Source: Prasinococcaceae sp. CCMP 1430 (lineage: Eukaryota; Plantae; Prasinodermophyta). From it: DNA of 5,453 nt. Within the stretch, counting starts at the first letter, position 1, and each line of letters opens with the position of its first letter. The notes under the pieces are model-generated. The model did not search any database. It saw only the letters and a program-made list of their open reading frames with translations, and was not told the origin of the DNA. A program made the position numbers and the translations under genes. The stretch lies in the NCBI GenBank assembly GCA_013416795.1, contig RQSC01000204.1, forward strand, positions 1 through 5,453, written 5' to 3'. This document shows positions 211 through 4,733 of the stretch, piece by piece.

Positions 211-246
211 CGCGCGCGCGCGCGCGCGCGCGCGCGCGCGCGCGCG
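211..246. repeat. Perfect (CG)18 dinucleotide microsatellite, self-complementary and Z-DNA prone
   Basis: 36 uninterrupted alternating C/G bases, read directly. Confidence 0.95.
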
Positions 247-342: not shown

Positions 343-402
343 ATGGAAACCGAAATTGAAACCGATGCGGCGGCCATCCGGACGCGCGAACCCCGCCGGC
401 CG
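343..402 (+). CDS. Candidate first exon of the long ORF (METEIETDAAAIRTREPRRP)
   Basis: ATG at 343; donor-like CCG|GTGGGT at 403; acceptor-like TCTCAG| at 460. The phase-0 intron 403-460 joins in frame to GGA at 461. The intron contains an N, so the join is unverified. Confidence 0.35.
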
Positions 403-452
403 GTGGGTTGAGGGGAGGAGGGGCGCGTGCGGGCGCGGCGCCACTCGCGCGC

Positions 453-453
453 N
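453..453. other. Single N (ambiguous base or contig joint) at the left edge of the low-GC3 block
   Basis: n at 453, where composition changes from GC-rich low complexity to mixed coding sequence. Confidence 0.9.
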
Positions 454-460
454 GTCTCAG

Positions 461-2290
461 GGAGCCCTGTTGGCTGCCGTTCATGCAGCGCTCGCACACA
501 CATATGGTACCGGTCTGTCTGAGCTCGGTCATCACAGCAATGGCGTGCTCGCACAATGGCTAGCACACAACTTTCATGTTCAGGACGAGATCGTGGCCGC
601 TGACGACACTCGCCCCGACGAACTCGACGACCTGACGGGAGTGGGGAGCTTCTTCGTTACGTCATACTTCTGGAATGGTGATCTCACGCTCGGGTTGAAC
701 GACGTGCGTGAATGGCTAATTGCGTTCGGTGACGCTTACTTGAGGGGCGCTTCGAACAGCGCAGCGGGCACGTGGGAAGCGCTCAAGGCGACGCTCGTCA
801 GGGGGCGGCTGGAAGAGGGGGTCTGGGACGGTGACACGCAACAGCCTGTGCGTGAGAAAGCCCGTGCCGTCATCGCTGCAACCGTGCGCTTTAAGGATTG
901 TGTGCACACACCGAATGCATGCGTGGCCGGGATGTCGGCCGAGGAGCAAGAGGCATTCCGCATGAACGAGGCAAGACATCTGGCCTCTGCTGCGAGATGG
1001 GCGAGGAGAGAGCTGGTAGAGGCCATTGGACAGACCTATTATTCTCACCTGGACATTGCGCTCGCTTGTTGCGTCTTCGATGCAGTGAGCGCGCCTGTGA
1101 CCGCGTGGCACAAATCGCGGCTCGAGCAAGAACAAAAAGAGGCCCAGGCGCGCGCAGCGGAAGAGGCGAGAGCTCGCAAGGCTCAGGACGAGGAGCAAAA
1201 GCGAGTATTTGCTGAAGCGGCCGCCTCGGAGCTCTTGTCGGCCGAGGAGAAAAGGGCAGAGGCCAGAGCAGCCGCCACCGAGGACGACGGTGCCTCCGCC
1301 AAGGCTGGCAAGCGAAATAAGAGGAGGAAGAAGCGGCAGCACAAGCAGAGTGTGGCTCGTGTGGAAGGCACCTCTCAAGTGAGCGACGCGGAGCGCCAGG
1401 CGCAGGAGGCGGCCAAGCAGGAGGTGGCTAGGCGCGCCGCTGTCAGAGCTCGGATCGAGGAGCAGCGCGCGGCCGAGTACGAAGCGAGCCTAGCTCGGCG
1501 TCGCGCCGAGCTCGAGGCCGAGGAAAAACGAATGGAGGAAGAAGTCCAGGCGGTGTCTGCCAGGGAGGCCACGCGGCAGAAGGAGGAGCGTGCCATGGCT
1601 GCTGAGCTCGAGCTGCGACATTTGCGCGAGGCTGAGGAAGCTTCCATTGCTGCCATGCTGGACGCAGAGGAGGATGAAGAGTCGGCACCAGCTGCTGACG
1701 ACTGCCGCGCGGCGCGGCTCGCGGTCCCGCGCGCCGGGGCGGCGCCGGAGGGCGGTGACGCACCGGTGAGCGTTGCCGAGCCCGCGGAGGCAGAGGAGGC
1801 GGCGGCGGCGCCTAAGGACATTCTGGACCCCGCCGACGGCACCGTGCAGTACGCCGCCCCACAGGGCGATGCGGGCACTGAGCTCGTGTCCAACCTCTTC
1901 TCGCTCTTCAAGGACGGCAGGGCGAGCGAGACCATCAACGGACGGTGCGCGCAGATGGGGTTCACCGTGGCGGCCTACCTCGAGCTGACGACGGACAAGT
2001 CGGTGCGCGAGCAGCTCTTCATCACGCGTGAGATCAGCCGTGGCATTATTCAGAAGACCATTAACTACCCGCAGGCAGGCTTCTTCCTGGCCCTGGCGAC
2101 GGTGGTCCTCGTCACGGCCGGTTCCATCGCTCCGGCCTTCAATGGCAAGGAGAAGAACGGCCTCAACGAGACCCCCGAGGACTTCGGCCCCTTCCGCGCC
2201 GAGGCGGAGCTCACCAACTCGCGCGCCGCGATGGTCGGGCTCGCGGCGCTGTGGGCCATTGAGGGCTTCACCGGGTCGGCCCTGCTCTAG
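461..2290 (+). CDS. Stop-free ORF: unknown helical domain + charged coiled coil + basic NLS-like patch, fused in frame to an ELIP-like protein
   Basis: Open frame to TAG 2288-2290. E/A/R/K-rich heptad-like stretches at about 1110-1260 and 1385-1680; KRNKRRKKR at 1310-1336; style break after ...SAPAADDC (1705). The true start is uncertain (the track's TTG at 356 is unlikely). Confidence 0.6.
   Translation, partial: GALLAAVHAALAHTYGTGLSELGHHSNGVLAQWLAHNFHVQDEIVAADDTRPDELDDLTGVGSFFVTSYFWNGDLTLGLNDVREWLIAFGDAYLRGASNSAAGTWEALKATLVRGRLEEGVWDGDTQQPVREKARAVIAATVRFKDCVHTPNACVAGMSAEEQEAFRMNEARHLASAARWARRELVEAIGQTYYSHLDIALACCVFDAVSAPVTAWHKSRLEQEQKEAQARAAEEARARKAQDEEQKRVFAEAAASELLSAEEKRAEARAAATEDDGASAKAGKRNKRRKKRQHKQSVARVEGTSQVSDAERQAQEAAKQEVARRAAVRARIEEQRAAEYEASLARRRAELEAEEKRMEEEVQAVSAREATRQKEERAMAAELELRHLREAEEASIAAMLDAEEDEESAPAADDCRAARLAVPRAGAAPEGGDAPVSVAEPAEAEEAAAAPKDILDPADGTVQYAAPQGDAGTELVSNLFSLFKDGRASETINGRCAQMGFTVAAYLELTTDKSVREQLFITREISRGIIQKTINYPQAGFFLALATVVLVTAGSIAPAFNGKEKNGLNETPEDFGPFRAEAELTNSRAAMVGLAALWAIEGFTGSALL
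1706..2290 (+). CDS. ELIP: ELIP/Cbr-type three-helix LHC-like (chlorophyll a/b-binding superfamily) light-stress protein, lacking its own start codon
   Basis: LHC motif 1 ETINGRCAQMGF (1928-1963), middle helix FFLALATVVLVTAGSIAPAF, and LHC motif 2 AELTNSRAAMVG (2204-2239) followed by LAALWAIEGFTGSALL*. This matches ELIP architecture. It is preceded by a transit-peptide-like remnant RAARLAVPR and an acidic linker. Confidence 0.88.
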   Translation, partial: RAARLAVPRAGAAPEGGDAPVSVAEPAEAEEAAAAPKDILDPADGTVQYAAPQGDAGTELVSNLFSLFKDGRASETINGRCAQMGFTVAAYLELTTDKSVREQLFITREISRGIIQKTINYPQAGFFLALATVVLVTAGSIAPAFNGKEKNGLNETPEDFGPFRAEAELTNSRAAMVGLAALWAIEGFTGSALL

Positions 2291-2643
2291 ATGACGGCCG
2301 TAGTCGACCCATAACATAATTTTTTGTGGAGCACTTGCACAACAGCGCGCTCGGGGCAGCGACGGCGCCCTCCCCCCCCGCCACCCCGCCCCGCAAACCC
2401 ACCCCTCAATTCCGCGCAAGTGAGTCGAGAGCACGCCAGCTTGCGGGCGCTCATGGGGCGGGCAGAAGCTGTGGGGGGCCTCGCGGCGCGCGCGTCTCCA
2501 GCGCGGGCGCGCGCTACAGCTCGCGGACGCGGCGCTTGGAAGTGCAACCCCGCGTCGGCTTTTGCGCGGAAGCGCCTGTGGTGCGCCTGCGCGGGCGCCA
2601 GAGCAGGCCGCGCCCGCGCGTGACGGGCGCGGCGGAGGCACCC

Positions 2644-3315
2644 ATGGCGTCGCGTGTCGCGACCAGGCCACGCGCCCGCGCGCACTTCCCCGCGCGCCCC
2701 CGTGCGCGTCGTGTTCGCGCGCGTGTGGGCATGCAGGCGCCCGGGAAGACGAAGGCGAAGGCCGAGGCGAAGGCCGAGGGCGCGTTCAGCGACGGCGTTG
2801 CCAAGGCGATGCTTGCCACGTACGACCCCACGAAGAACAAGAAAATTGTCTATGGTGTGTTCCAGCAGGAGGTCGATCCCGCAGTGCTCGCCGATACTAG
2901 CGACGAGACGCTCGAGGCGCGCTCAGCAGCGCGCGCGGCGGCCGCCGACCAGCTCGTCAACATCGGTGCCGAAGAGCGCACGCGCCGCACGCGCGTCGGC
3001 GCCGTCATGAGCGTTGCCACCGTGGCACTCGGTGCAGCGCTCTTCGGCGCGGAGATGAGCCCTGTGGTGAAGGCGGGTGCCATGTACTTCCCCATCGCTC
3101 TCAGCCTAGGCTTCCTCGAAAGCGGGGCCAAGGGGCTCTGAAACATCGCGCAGGCGGGTGTCTGGGACGTGGACGGCACGGGCCTGCGCGAAATCGAGGA
3201 CAAGTCCGTGGCTGCCGCGCTGCGCGAAAAGGTGAACGCCTTCAATGTGCGGAGCGCTGTGACGAGCGCGGCGATCGCAGCAGCGTACGGCGCTGCTGCG
3301 GCGCTGGCCGCGTAG
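2644..3315 (+). CDS. Probable membrane selenoprotein (MSP-like), about 223 aa, with UGA 3139-3141 read as Sec in GLUNIAQAG
   Basis: After the TGA the frame continues NIAQAGVWDVDGTGLREIEDKSVAAALREKVNAFNVRSAVTSAAIAAAYGAAAALAA to TAG 3313-3315; 29 of the first 33 post-TGA codons end in G/C. There are two hydrophobic helices before the TGA and one at the C-terminus, and a SECIS lies downstream. Start at ATG 2644 is tentative (ATG 2731, or an acceptor at 2736, are alternatives). Confidence 0.82.
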
Positions 3316-3382
3316 GCGGTCGCCGCCCCCGCCTCGGTGCTCGCGCCGAGCAGGAGCGCTCCGAGGCTTTTGCGGGAAGCGC

Positions 3383-3462
3383 CGCGGGCTCGCATGACGG
3401 CCAGAGGCCAAAGCCCTCACCCAACCGAGGGCGCCTCGTTGGCCCGACACCCTCTGCCCGCG
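3383..3462 (+). promoter_or_regulatory. Eukaryotic SECIS element, form 2 (3'UTR RNA structure)
   Basis: Helix I CGCGGGC 3383-89 / GCCCGCG 3456-62; core A-UGAC 3394-98 / CGAC 3445-48 (tandem G.A/A.G); helix II GGCCAGAGGC 3399-3408 / GCCUC-gu-UGGCC 3433-44; unpaired AAA 3410-12; apical ministem GCCCUC 3413-18 / GAGGGC 3427-32 with an 8-nt loop. Confidence 0.88.
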
Positions 3463-3485
3463 TCCTCCCCGCGCGTTGTGTTTGC

Positions 3486-3490
3486 TGTAA
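3486..3490 (+). terminator. Candidate TGTAA polyadenylation signal for the selenoprotein mRNA
   Basis: TGTAA in an AT-rich patch 24 nt after the SECIS. UGUAA is the established poly(A) signal of many chlorophytes. This would place the SECIS inside the mRNA. Confidence 0.5.
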
Positions 3491-3672
3491 TATTGGTATT
3501 GGTGCACTGTGTGTATCCCACGCGCACGCTCTCGGCCGCCCAATGCGCTCGATCGGAATGCGCGCCACGAGCGTGCTCCGAAGCGTTGCTCGCACTCAGC
3601 ACGGCTCTGGCTCTTCTTACGTCGGTATGTGTACACTCAACCTGCCGCACGGGCGCGCGCGCACGCTCACTT

Positions 3673-4530
3673 CTACTCGTTGCCCCGGCGCGGCTGCAGG
3701 CCGGGCATGAGCTGCGGCAACGCGTCAGGCCTGCTGTCGGTGCCGGAGCCACCCTTGCCGTTGGAGATGAGGCACACGTCATACAGGTCGCCAGGCCGCT
3801 CGTAGATCTCGCACGAGATGTCCGGGCCGAAGAAGCGCTCGATCTTCTCGCGGCGGCCCTCCCAGCCGGCAATGTCCACCTGCGGGCAGCGGTGAGGCGC
3901 GGCCTCGATCGTCAGGTACCGGCCCGAGGGCGGCGCGCGCGGCGGCGCATGCGCGCGGGCGAGCGAGCGAGATGGCGCTTGCGCGCACCTTGGGCGACTC
4001 AAAGACGAGCACGAGCGCGTAGAAGCCGTTGATCACGCGCTCCTGCAGCCCCACGAGCTCCGGCGAGTCGCGGCGCGCAATGCCGCCCGCGGCGCGGCGG
4101 CCGAAGAGGAAGATGCGCTCGAGCGCCTCCTCGAGGTGCTGCTCGTCACCGTAGCGGTAGCGCGTGGTGTCCGACTTGACCTGCACCTGGATGTCAGTGG
4201 CCTGCGAGGCGCGCAGCTTGTCGGCGTCCTCGTACGTGCGGCAATCGAGCGGGTCCAGCTGTGCGTACTTGAGCGCGCTGCCCAGCAGCGAGATGATGAA
4301 GCCGTAGATGAGCAGCGGCGCCGAGCCGCTCTGTCCGGGCAGGTAGTTGAAGAAGGCGCCGAAGCCGTACAGGAGCATGGAGAGCCCGACGGTGACACCG
4401 ATGGTACCGAAGGACAGCTCGGAGATGTTGAGCCCATCCTCCTTCTCGACGACCCTCGTGCAATCGCTGTACGCCGGAGCGGTGCGCGGCGCGCCCGCCG
4501 GCGCCTCCGCGGCGCGCGCGGCCACGCGGC
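3673..4530 (-). CDS. APE1: APE1 (Acclimation of Photosynthesis to Environment 1) / DUF2854 / Slr0575-like thylakoid membrane protein; exons 4530-3989 (5' partial) and 3879-3673
   Basis: Family motifs YGFGAFF, LLIYGFIISLLGSALKYAQLDP, TTRYRYGDEQHLEEALERIF, YALVLVFE, and after splicing KIERFFGPDI...YDVCLIS; stop TAG at 3675-3673. The N-terminus is lost in the N gap. Confidence 0.92.
3880..3988 (-). other. 109-nt phase-0 GT-AG spliceosomal intron of APE1
   Basis: AAG|GTGCGC...CCTGAC...CCGCAG|GTG on the - strand; removal gives ...FESPK-VDIAGW..., restoring the APE1 C-terminal motif. Confidence 0.9.
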
Positions 4531-4733
4531 NNNNNNNNNNNNNNNNNNNNNNNNNNNNNNNNNNNNNNNNNNNNNNNNNNNNNNNNNNNNNNNNNNNNNN
4601 NNNNNNNNNNNNNNNNNNNNNNNNNNNNNNNNNNNNNNNNNNNNNNNNNNNNNNNNNNNNNNNNNNNNNNNNNNNNNNNNNNNNNNNNNNNNNNNNNNNN
4701 NNNNNNNNNNNNNNNNNNNNNNNNNNNNNNNNN
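4531..4733. other. Assembly gap (203 N)
   Basis: Run of N; covers the APE1 start and transit peptide. Confidence 1.

What the first reader, a model, noticed from the sequence alone, without database searches (positions are those of the whole stretch)
2644..3315. Hidden selenoprotein: the TGA at 3139 is probably selenocysteine, not a stop
Seen: the ORF track ends at TGA 3139-3141, yet the frame continues for 57 sense codons with host-like codon usage (29/33 GC3 counted by hand) and a C-terminal hydrophobic helix, and a SECIS starts about 240 nt downstream. Known: eukaryotic Sec insertion needs an in-frame UGA plus a 3'UTR SECIS, and algae have large selenoproteomes. Inference: the layout (VNIGAEERTRR, two TM helices, GFLESGAKGL-U-NIAQAG, W-D-x-D-G) resembles my recollection of the poorly characterised membrane selenoprotein (MSP) family; that assignment is from memory. 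Standard pipelines would truncate this protein. It has no thioredoxin-fold CxxU motif, so its Sec chemistry is unexplained.
Basis: partly seen in the sequence, partly recalled or inferred. Interest (0 to 1): 0.85.

Follow-up and report, generated by a model that had tools for sequence, protein, structure and literature searches.

The report
Real selenoprotein, but not MSP

Summary
ATG 2644 to TGA 3139-3141, then 57 sense codons to TAG 3313-3315, then a form-2 SECIS at 3383-3462.

An open frame alone is weak evidence: 24% of inter-stop stretches in this 68.5% GC window reach 57 codons. Homology decides it.
- An exhaustive HMMER search gave 142 cluster representatives.
- About 130 are gene calls that end exactly at the residue before the TGA.
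- Six clusters run on about 57 residues with Cys at that column.
- Five show "W", which is TGA on the DNA.
- In 80 of 80 metagenome loci (56 distinct proteins) found with a motif blind to that codon, the codon is TGA. The true terminators vary.
- SECIS elements with covarying helix II lie 3' of many homologues.

RNA contigs from four runs run collinear with the DNA across the TGA; the longest spans 2608-3509. They show no intron and no variant at the TGA.

The MSP label is wrong. MSP carries Sec in a VGSUCWP motif. This protein's motifs are those of "hypothetical protein 3", published for Ostreococcus in Lobanov 2007. One of my loci (L044) is identical to that sequence over the residues compared.

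Function is unknown. New leads are plastid-type presequences in homologues and a predicted fold resembling bacterial DUF2892/YgaP-like and fungal RAX1_C membrane domains.

The parts
2608..3509 (+). mRNA extent as seen in RNA-library contigs; unspliced
   Evidence: the X1 contig of 902 nt equals window 2608-3509 with 0 differences and 0 gaps. X4 covers 2608-3419, X3 2702-3506 and X2 2751-3502. Depth is zero at 2300-2581 (it first rises in the 2582-2628 bin) and at 3522-3568.
2644..3138 (+). CDS part 1, residues 1-165. It holds an Arg/Ala-rich presequence (about 1-45), a conserved soluble N-domain (KKIVYGVFQQEVDP ... LVNIGAEERTRR), membrane helix 1 (about 2995-3051) and membrane helix 2 (about 3061-3123), and ends in S-x-x-x-G-L.
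   Evidence: Helix positions are inferred from the AlphaFold model of the Cys homologue P0131 and from alignment A2.
3139..3141 (+). UGA read as selenocysteine (residue 166)
   Evidence: Cys stands at this column in 6 homologue clusters. TGA stands there in L008-L011 and in 80 of 80 metagenome loci. The codon is unchanged in 4 RNA runs.
3142..3312 (+). CDS part 2, residues 167-223. It holds NIAQAG, the hairpin VWDVDGTGLREIED, an amphipathic helix and a C-terminal membrane helix (about 3250-3312).
   Evidence: 47-85% identity to 80 metagenome loci.
3313..3315 (+). true stop codon TAG
   Evidence: Homologues end within a few residues of this point with TAA, TAG or TGA.
3383..3462 (+). form-2 SECIS. 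Helix I is 3383-3389 with 3456-3462, the AUGA core is 3394-3397, helix II is 3398-3408 with 3432-3445, the AAA is 3410-3412, the mini-stem is 3413-3418 with 3427-3432, and the 3' GA is 3446-3447.
   Evidence: fold, z = -4.4. (Rfam SECIS_1 18.9 bits, below the gathering score of 35). (own covariance model, homologous elements in other loci, covariation).

Best explanation
The gene at 2644-3315 encodes a 223-residue membrane selenoprotein. It is an orthologue of the algal family first published as 'hypothetical protein 3' of Ostreococcus (Lobanov et al. 2007).

Shown:
- The mRNA (about 2608-3509) is unspliced. It carries an in-frame UGA at 3139 and a form-2 SECIS at 3383-3462 in its 3'UTR.
- The UGA column is TGA or Cys throughout the family, and the sequence on both sides is conserved as protein.

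Inferred from the established eukaryotic Sec pathway: SBP2 bound to the SECIS recruits eEFSec with Sec-tRNA, so the ribosome inserts Sec at UGA and terminates at TAG 3313.

Inferred for the protein, from an AlphaFold model of a Cys homologue and from the alignments:
- A soluble N-domain and two membrane helices come first.
- Sec lies at the membrane interface directly after helix 2, in S-x3-G-L-U-N-I-A-Q.
- A short helix, the WDVDGxG hairpin and a third membrane helix follow.

Most likely role, about 30-35% and not shown: a single-Sec redox or chalcogen-transfer site at the stromal face of a plastid membrane, working with an external thiol or across a homodimer. The protein has no Cys partner.
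For: Homology:
- phmmer with residues 45-165 against 1.84 billion proteins gave 142 hits at E <= 1e-3. Nearly all end on query residue 121, the residue before the TGA.
- extended homologues carry Cys (P0008, P0025, P0105 from Bryopsis, P0117, P0127, P0131) or 'W'.
- 'W' is TGA on the DNA in the four W-form loci whose DNA was fetched (L008-L011, from P0081, P0049 and P0112).
- the two window pieces flank exactly one alignment column, with no gap.
- a search seeded 3 residues after the Sec column returned 80 loci and 56 distinct proteins. All have TGA there, the upstream GF..S...GL motif is in frame in all but two, and the real terminators are TAA, TAG or TGA.
- the published O. lucimarinus sequence equals the L044 translation over the 86 residues compared.

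SECIS:
- the SECIS model finds + strand elements just 3' of the ORF in non-seed loci (43.7, 40.4, 31.7 and 29.7 bits).
- 28 compensatory cells against 10.7 in shuffles; 0 to 5 when the partners are slid.

RNA and code:
- RNA contigs are collinear across the TGA and the SECIS.
- TGA also serves as the ordinary terminator in several of these genes, so it is not reassigned genome-wide.
Against: - No direct protein evidence exists (no 75Se labelling or mass spectrometry).
- The Sec machinery of this genome was not examined. Only unchecked notes of other selenoprotein genes in the same genome exist.
- The Rfam SECIS_1 score (18.9 bits) is below the curated cut-off of 35.
- The window protein's N-terminus has no hydrophobic signal-peptide core, unlike many homologues, so its location is unsure.
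- The function is inferred only from position and fold.
- The structure used is that of a Cys homologue, not of this protein.
Confidence: 0.9

Rival explanations
1. UGA 3139 is an ordinary stop. The product is the 165-residue protein that pipelines call, and the open frame behind it is chance or a remnant.
For: Gene callers end about 130 of 142 homologue clusters at this point. Open stretches of 57 codons are common in this GC-rich DNA: 24% of inter-stop stretches.
Against: The downstream 57 residues are conserved as protein at 47-85% identity in 56 distinct versions. They are fused in one ORF through Cys in six clusters. The codon is always TGA, never TAA or TAG, in 80 of 80 loci, while the real terminators vary. 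A conserved SECIS follows. The codon-position GC of the extension equals that of the CDS.
Confidence: 0.03
2. UGA is read through, but by a near-cognate or suppressor tRNA (Trp, Cys or Arg) or under a variant genetic code, not as Sec.
For: Some metagenome gene callers translated the codon as W. No direct Sec detection exists.
Against: TGA also serves as the true terminator of several family members (L017, L030, L043, L082 and others), so it is not reassigned. A SECIS with covarying helix II lies in the 3'UTRs. The sense alternative in homologues is Cys, the usual Sec counterpart. Ostreococcus members were published as selenoproteins.
Confidence: 0.04
3. It is a member of the MSP (membrane selenoprotein) family.
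For: Both are small multi-helix membrane selenoproteins of algae without a thioredoxin fold.
Against: The published MSP alignment has Sec in PALVGS-U-CWPLL in the first helix, a conserved CLS..GW block and a different order of elements. None of these is present here. The window protein has no Cys, and its Sec follows helix 2.
Confidence: 0.02

Closest known systems
'Hypothetical protein 3' selenoprotein of Ostreococcus tauri and O. lucimarinus (Lobanov et al. 2007, Genome Biol 8:R198, supplementary file 2). It may be counted within the 'Hypo' class of Jiang et al. 2020, but that link was not checked.
   Same: The same motifs occur in the same order: YGVFQ.DV, L.NID..ER.RR, two helices, GF..S...GL-U-NIAQAGVWDV[DE]G.G, KVN.FN and a C-terminal helix. 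There is a single Sec and a 3'UTR SECIS. The window's C-terminal piece is 69% identical to L044, which equals the published O. lucimarinus protein over the residues compared.
   Different: This copy comes from a different, very GC-rich alga. It has an AUGA-type SECIS core, whereas many of the related loci here have GUGA cores, the type reported for Ostreococcus. Its presequence is Arg-rich and different. The family was reported only for Ostreococcus in that paper. Here it appears as at least 142 clusters at 50% identity.
MSP, membrane selenoprotein (Ostreococcus, Chlamydomonas, Volvox, Dictyostelium)
   Same: A small algal membrane selenoprotein of unknown function with no thioredoxin fold.
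   Different: MSP has a U-C pair in a VGSUCWP motif in its first helix, a different sequence, and a second Sec in Dictyostelium. None of these features is present here.
YgaP-like transmembrane domain / DUF2892 (PF11127) of bacteria
   Same: The predicted fold of residues about 82-203 of the Cys homologue superposes on bacterial DUF2892-named proteins: Foldseek E 1.9e-4, rmsd 1.9 A over 123 residues, TM by hit 0.81. hhalign places the Cys conserved in 12 enterobacterial YgaP orthologues (G-F-C-G-M-A-R, after helix 2) on the Sec/Cys column (G-L-U-N-I-A-Q).
   Different: There is no Pfam hit. The hhalign result is weak (E 0.0035, probability 9%, 19 columns). The algal family adds an N-terminal soluble domain and the WDVDG hairpin. 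No bacterial or archaeal relative carrying that motif was found.
RAX1_C (PF27892), the C-terminal membrane domain of fungal Rax1 / RGS-domain proteins
   Same: The predicted three-helix membrane domain superposes at rmsd 1.7-2.1 A over about 120-124 residues.
   Different: Identity is 14-18%. Rax1 is a bud-site selection protein with an RGS domain and is not a selenoprotein. Homology is unproven.
SELENOK / SELENOS
   Same: Small membrane-anchored selenoproteins with a lone Sec and no thioredoxin fold.
   Different: They have a single helix, with Sec 2-3 residues from the C-terminus in a disordered tail, and they sit in the ER. No sequence similarity was detected.

Membership tests
Ostreococcus 'hypothetical protein 3' selenoprotein family | Sec (or Cys) in G-L-U-N-[IV]-[AG]-Q-x-G-x-W-D-V-[DE]-G-x-G directly after the second membrane helix | tested here: met
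   The window reads KGL-U-NIAQAGVWDVDGTG.
Ostreococcus 'hypothetical protein 3' selenoprotein family | [quoted passage not shown] | tested here: met
   The N-terminal piece hits P0084 at E 1.2e-6 against 1.84 billion proteins. P0084's N-terminus nearly equals the published O. lucimarinus sequence. The C-terminal piece is 69% identical to L044, E 2e-18, and L044 equals the published protein over the residues compared.
Ostreococcus 'hypothetical protein 3' selenoprotein family | SECIS element in the 3'UTR | tested here: met
MSP (membrane selenoprotein) | Sec-Cys pair in the P-A-L-V-G-S-U-C-W-P motif of the first membrane helix | tested here: not met
   The window protein has no Cys and no such motif.
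MSP (membrane selenoprotein) | Conserved C-L-S-x-x-G-W block and C-terminal helices | tested here: not met
   Absent from the translation and from the family consensus.
Eukaryotic SECIS (Rfam RF00031 SECIS_1) | AUGA / GA non-Watson-Crick quartet, helix II of about 10-12 bp, unpaired AA(A) in the apical part, helix I below an internal loop | tested here: met
   The positions are given under parts.
Eukaryotic SECIS (Rfam RF00031 SECIS_1) | Score at or above Rfam's gathering threshold (35 bits) | tested here: not met
   18.9 bits in the window and 25 bits in L025. My own model, built from six 3'UTR elements of this family, gives new hits of 29.7-43.7 bits in non-seed loci.
Eukaryotic SECIS (Rfam RF00031 SECIS_1) | Base pairs kept by compensatory change across homologues | tested here: met
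   90.6% of cells paired, 28 cells with a change on both sides against 10.7 in shuffles, and 0 to 5 when slid. Caveat: the alignment was fitted to the model.
Selenoprotein (Sec decoding) | Sec machinery present in the genome (tRNA-Sec, SPS, PSTK, SecS, eEFSec, SBP2) | not testable with these tools
   Only this window was readable. Unchecked first-reader notes list GPX, SelO, SelK, Grx, PDI and Trx-fold selenoprotein genes in the same genome.
Selenoprotein (Sec decoding) | Selenium found in the protein | not testable with these tools
   Needs 75Se labelling or mass spectrometry.
YgaP-like_TM / DUF2892 (PF11127) | Match to the Pfam model | tested here: not met
   No hit in 110 members at E <= 10. 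E. coli YgaP itself matches at 7e-8.
YgaP-like_TM / DUF2892 (PF11127) | Shared fold, and the conserved Cys after helix 2 aligned with Sec | tested here: inconclusive
   Foldseek probability 1.00, E 1e-5 to 2e-4, to bacterial proteins including DUF2892-named ones. hhalign gives E 0.0035, probability 9%, with the Cys on the Sec column.

The most novel reading that the evidence does not exclude
The algal 'hypothetical protein 3' selenoproteins are a Sec-using, plastid-targeted branch of the bacterial YgaP-like/DUF2892 membrane-domain superfamily, to which fungal RAX1_C would also belong. Their Sec would be the homologue of the Cys that follows helix 2 in YgaP (invariant in the 12 enterobacterial orthologues aligned). 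That would mark this membrane-interface chalcogen as the functional site of a widespread and so far functionless domain. It would link the algal protein to sulfur/selenium (persulfide, thiocyanate or selenide) handling at the plastid membrane.
Probability: 0.3. Interest if true: 0.55.

Novelty: new member of a known kind. Interest (0 to 1): 0.3.

Why it matters
For annotation: this gene and about 130 homologue clusters in public protein collections are truncated at the Sec codon. They lose a conserved 57-residue domain and a membrane helix, so the calls should be corrected.

For biology: the family is a nearly all-Sec, single-Sec, Cys-free membrane protein family of marine algae with no known function. 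Many homologues carry presequences that I read, from general knowledge, as plastid-targeting. It is therefore a candidate selenium-dependent plastid function in the organisms with the largest eukaryotic selenoproteomes.

It is not a discovery of a new selenoprotein kind. The family was published in 2007. This very gene may already be listed in the published selenoproteome surveys of its organism, which I could not read.

Tried and rejected
- Pfam and NCBIfam scans of both pieces and of 110 family members found no family.
- The word-indexed protein search found only near-identical truncated calls. With the family profile it found only 4 proteins.
- The first metagenome scan used a pattern that started on [CW], so it could not see TGA forms and found nothing. 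A 40-sequence N-terminal alignment had no stretch conserved enough to search with.
- Rfam on 20 related loci saw only one weak SECIS_1 hit. My first ATGA-only SECIS script missed the GUGA-type elements.
- MAFFT misaligned SECIS seeds twice before a six-seed alignment worked.
- Cluster look-ups gave no informative names apart from Bryopsis.
- Gobler et al. 2011 and 2013 (Aureococcus selenoproteome) are not held in the paper library. So I could not check whether this gene is already listed. The organism's name is also withheld.
- The supplement of the 2020 algal survey holds no sequences.
- Foldseek against the PDB gave nothing below E = 3.
- A scan of GTDB genomes for the WDVDG motif found no prokaryotic relative.
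- The YgaP search returned only close enterobacterial orthologues, so the DUF2892 profile was shallow.
- The joint 2779 to 3342 in the RNA table comes from unrelated contigs sharing a 21-nt low-complexity match and is not splicing.
- MSP membership was rejected on motifs.
- An EF-hand reading of DVDGTG...IED was considered and dropped. The model shows a beta-hairpin, and the hydrophobic position is out of register.

Full report
**1. Observation**

Frame 1 from ATG 2644 reads 165 sense codons, TGA at 3139-3141, 57 more sense codons and TAG at 3313-3315. The extension has the same codon-position GC profile as the upstream CDS: 0.72/0.54/0.82 against 0.71/0.55/0.82. The UTRs read in the same frame have GC2 of 0.64-0.73.

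The window is 68.5% GC. An open stretch of at least 57 codons follows 24% of all stops in this window, and composition alone gives P = 0.32. The continuing frame is therefore not evidence on its own.

The SECIS is real as a structure. Positions 3383-3462 fold into helix I (7 bp), an internal loop with AUGA (3394-3397) opposite GA (3446-3447), helix II, an unpaired AAA (3410-3412) and an apical mini-stem. The energy is -41.7 kcal/mol, z = -4.4, and 0 of 200 shuffles fold as well. Rfam's SECIS_1 model aligns end to end but scores only 18.9 bits against a gathering score of 35.

**2. Is the TGA real and transcribed?**

Metagenome contigs (Tara and Logan, L001-L007) carry the gene. The two that I aligned (L001 and L002) have the same TGA. 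The only coding difference after it in that alignment is a synonymous ACG/ACC.

Contigs of four RNA libraries lie collinear on the DNA.
- One 902-nt contig equals 2608-3509 with no difference and no gap.
- The others cover 2608-3419, 2702-3506 and 2751-3502.
- The intergenic stretches at 2300-2581 and 3522-3568 have zero depth.

So the mRNA runs from about 2608 to about 3509. It has no intron and contains the UGA, the extension and the SECIS. Strain variants in the metatranscriptomes are 3180 G>C (synonymous), 3228 A>C (Glu to Asp, the residue many homologues have) and 3425 C>T (in the SECIS apical loop). None touches 3139-3141. These are assembled contigs, not raw reads, so rare variants would not be seen.

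**3. Homologues**

The tools do not accept the read-through protein, so I searched the pieces separately. An exhaustive phmmer search of residues 45-165 against 1.84 billion cluster representatives gave 142 hits at E <= 1e-3. Nearly all of them end on the query's last residue, with ...S-x-x-x-G-L as their C-terminus (127 end in GL).

Eleven representatives run on for 57-69 residues.
- Six carry Cys at the next position: P0008, P0025, P0105 (Bryopsis sp., GMH44175.1), P0117, P0127 and P0131.
- Five carry 'W'.

In the four W-form loci whose DNA I could fetch (L008-L011, encoding P0081, P0049 and P0112), the 'W' codon is TGA, so the gene callers had used a TGA = Trp code. No DNA was available for P0037, and P0061 was not looked up. 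In a joint alignment the two window pieces flank exactly one column, the Cys/TGA column, without a gap. The residues after it are the best conserved of the whole protein (N-I-A-Q-x-G-x-W-D-V-D-G-x-G).

For an unbiased count I searched JGI metagenome contigs with an alignment of the C-terminal pieces only. The tool's pattern started three residues after the Sec column, so it was blind to that codon.
- 129 relatives were found and the best 80 kept.
- They hold 56 distinct protein versions, 47-85% identical to the window piece.
- The codon before N-I-[AG]-Q is TGA in 80 of 80.
- The upstream frame reads ...GF..S...GL in all but two loci (L080 and L091).
- The genuine terminators are a mix of TAA, TAG and TGA.

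A codon held as TGA across that divergence, inside a frame conserved as protein, with Cys as the only sense alternative, is the signature of Sec. Because TGA also ends several of these same genes, a reassigned genetic code is excluded.

**4. SECIS in the homologues**

A script found AUGA- or GUGA-core hairpins of the same form shortly after the stop in many loci. GUGA is the type reported for Ostreococcus.

A covariance model built from six of them found further + strand elements just 3' of the ORF in loci that were not seeds: L080 at 43.7 bits, L017 at 40.4, L076 at 31.7, L050 at 29.7 and L072 at 17.

On the resulting alignment, 90.6% of helix II cells pair. 28 cells show changes on both sides, against 10.7 +/- 2.2 in shuffles and 0 to 5 when the partners are slid. 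The alignment was fitted to the model, which favours it.

**5. Which family?**

The published MSP alignment (Lobanov et al. 2007, supplementary file 2) has Sec in P-A-L-V-G-S-U-C-W-P-L-L within the first helix and a C-L-S..G-W block. The window protein has no Cys and none of this.

The same supplementary file prints 'hypothetical protein 3' of O. tauri and O. lucimarinus. It contains ...YGVFQRD......L.NID.EER.R......PLFFALGFVGSAK.GL-U-NIAQAGVWDV.G.G... and ...KVNDFN..., which is this family. My locus L044 matches the printed O. lucimarinus protein at all 86 residues compared on the two sides of the Sec codon. P0084 carries its N-terminus.

[quoted passage not shown] The 2020 algal survey has a 'Hypo' class that is about 80% Sec forms; I could not check whether that class includes this family. 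I could not read the two papers on the selenoproteome of the pelagophyte that this window may come from. So I cannot say whether this very gene is already listed. The organism's name is also withheld.

**6. What the protein looks like**

An AlphaFold2 model of the Cys homologue P0131, built with a 110-row alignment, is confident: mean pLDDT 89.6, pTM 0.80. Its elements in order are:
- a small N-terminal beta-hairpin (the YGVF region) and a long helix ending in the invariant E-R-x-R-R;
- two membrane helices (91-117 and 122-145);
- Cys148, the Sec position, at the end of helix 2;
- a one-turn helix (N-L-A-Q-A) and a hairpin (W-D-V-D-G-x-G ... I-E-D);
- a long helix whose second half is the C-terminal membrane segment.

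By the positive-inside rule, the N-domain, the Sec and the hairpin lie on the same side of the membrane (inference).

No solved structure resembles the model. In AlphaFold DB clusters and the ESM Atlas, the membrane part superposes on small bacterial and archaeal proteins, some named DUF2892. The values are E 1e-5 to 2e-4, rmsd 1.2-1.9 A over 118-123 residues, 23-25% identity and TM by hit 0.77-0.85. It also superposes on the C-terminal domain of fungal Rax1/RGS proteins, RAX1_C.

E. coli YgaP, the founding member of PF11127, has G-I-S-G-F-C-G-M-A-R after its second helix. The algal family has x-x-K-G-L-U-N-I-A-Q. hhalign puts the YgaP Cys on the Sec column, but weakly: E 0.0035, probability 9%, 19 columns, against a shallow profile of enterobacterial orthologues. 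I treat this as a lead, not a result.

**7. Location**

Of 86 homologues with a full-looking N-terminus, 37 start with a hydrophobic signal peptide. A rough pattern count finds a small-x-small-Phe junction after it in 22 and Leu, Trp or Tyr in 7 more; a few of the Phe matches look spurious, so about 20 is the safer figure. From my own knowledge, this junction is the bipartite presequence (ASAFAP motif) that directs proteins to the complex plastids of diatoms, haptophytes and their relatives. The green-algal members have Arg/Ser/Thr/Ala-rich transit-like extensions.

The family therefore looks plastid-targeted (inference). The window's own N-terminus is Arg/Ala-rich and has no hydrophobic core. 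Two RNA contigs start at 2608, which argues against a missing upstream exon. Its targeting remains unexplained.

**8. Mechanism, stated with odds**

Sec insertion by the standard SECIS / SBP2 / eEFSec route: about 0.9.

Function is unknown in the literature. My best guess, about 0.3, is a lone, membrane-interface selenol acting in redox or sulfur/selenium transfer on the stromal side of a plastid membrane. It would be regenerated by a soluble thiol or paired across a dimer; YgaP's membrane domain is a homodimer. Nothing here tests this.

**9. Verdict**

The finding is a correct call of a selenoprotein that pipelines truncate, with the wrong family name. The kind has been known since 2007. The additions here are its breadth, its near-total use of Sec, the plastid-type presequences and the DUF2892/RAX1_C fold lead.

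Noticed in passing
window 356-2290 (+): A long ORF whose C-terminal 120 residues match the chlorophyll a/b-binding domain (PF00504, E 7e-10). A Glu/Ala/Arg/Lys-rich coiled-coil-like stretch precedes it. Another first-reader note (s1-371026) calls it a fusion. In metagenome contig L002 the gene caller gives a 215-residue LHC-like protein only, so the long ORF may be a GC-rich read-on rather than one protein.
   Followed up: partly
window 3673-4500 (-): A convergent neighbour encodes a DUF2854 protein. PF11016 profile positions 2-124 match in the frame of 3782-4498 (E 2e-32), and positions 117-145 match in another frame at 3676-4002. This implies a short intron at about 3900-3990. RNA contigs start at 3609, so the two genes' 3' ends lie about 100 nt apart.
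   Followed up: partly
window 4531-4733: A run of N (an assembly gap) lies inside or just upstream of the DUF2854 gene's 5' part. A single N stands at 453.
   Followed up: no
window 216-246: A (CG)n dinucleotide repeat of about 30 nt lies in a very GC-rich, C-rich upstream region.
   Followed up: no
protein collections (P0037, P0049, P0061, P0081, P0112; loci L008-L011): Some public metagenome gene calls translate the Sec-TGA as Trp because a TGA = Trp code was chosen for short eukaryotic contigs. The same sequences also exist as truncated calls within one cluster, for example 224-aa and 163-aa members in the cluster of P0081.
   Followed up: yes
L071, L083, L086, L087, L089, L090: One subgroup of homologues carries a further 25-35 residues after the usual end, with a fourth hydrophobic segment (...GKIPK..).
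   Followed up: no
window 887-953 (+): A weak Rfam hit to the archaeal C/D snoRNA sR53 (24.9 bits against a gathering score of 49, E 0.012) lies inside the upstream ORF. It is probably chance.
   Followed up: no
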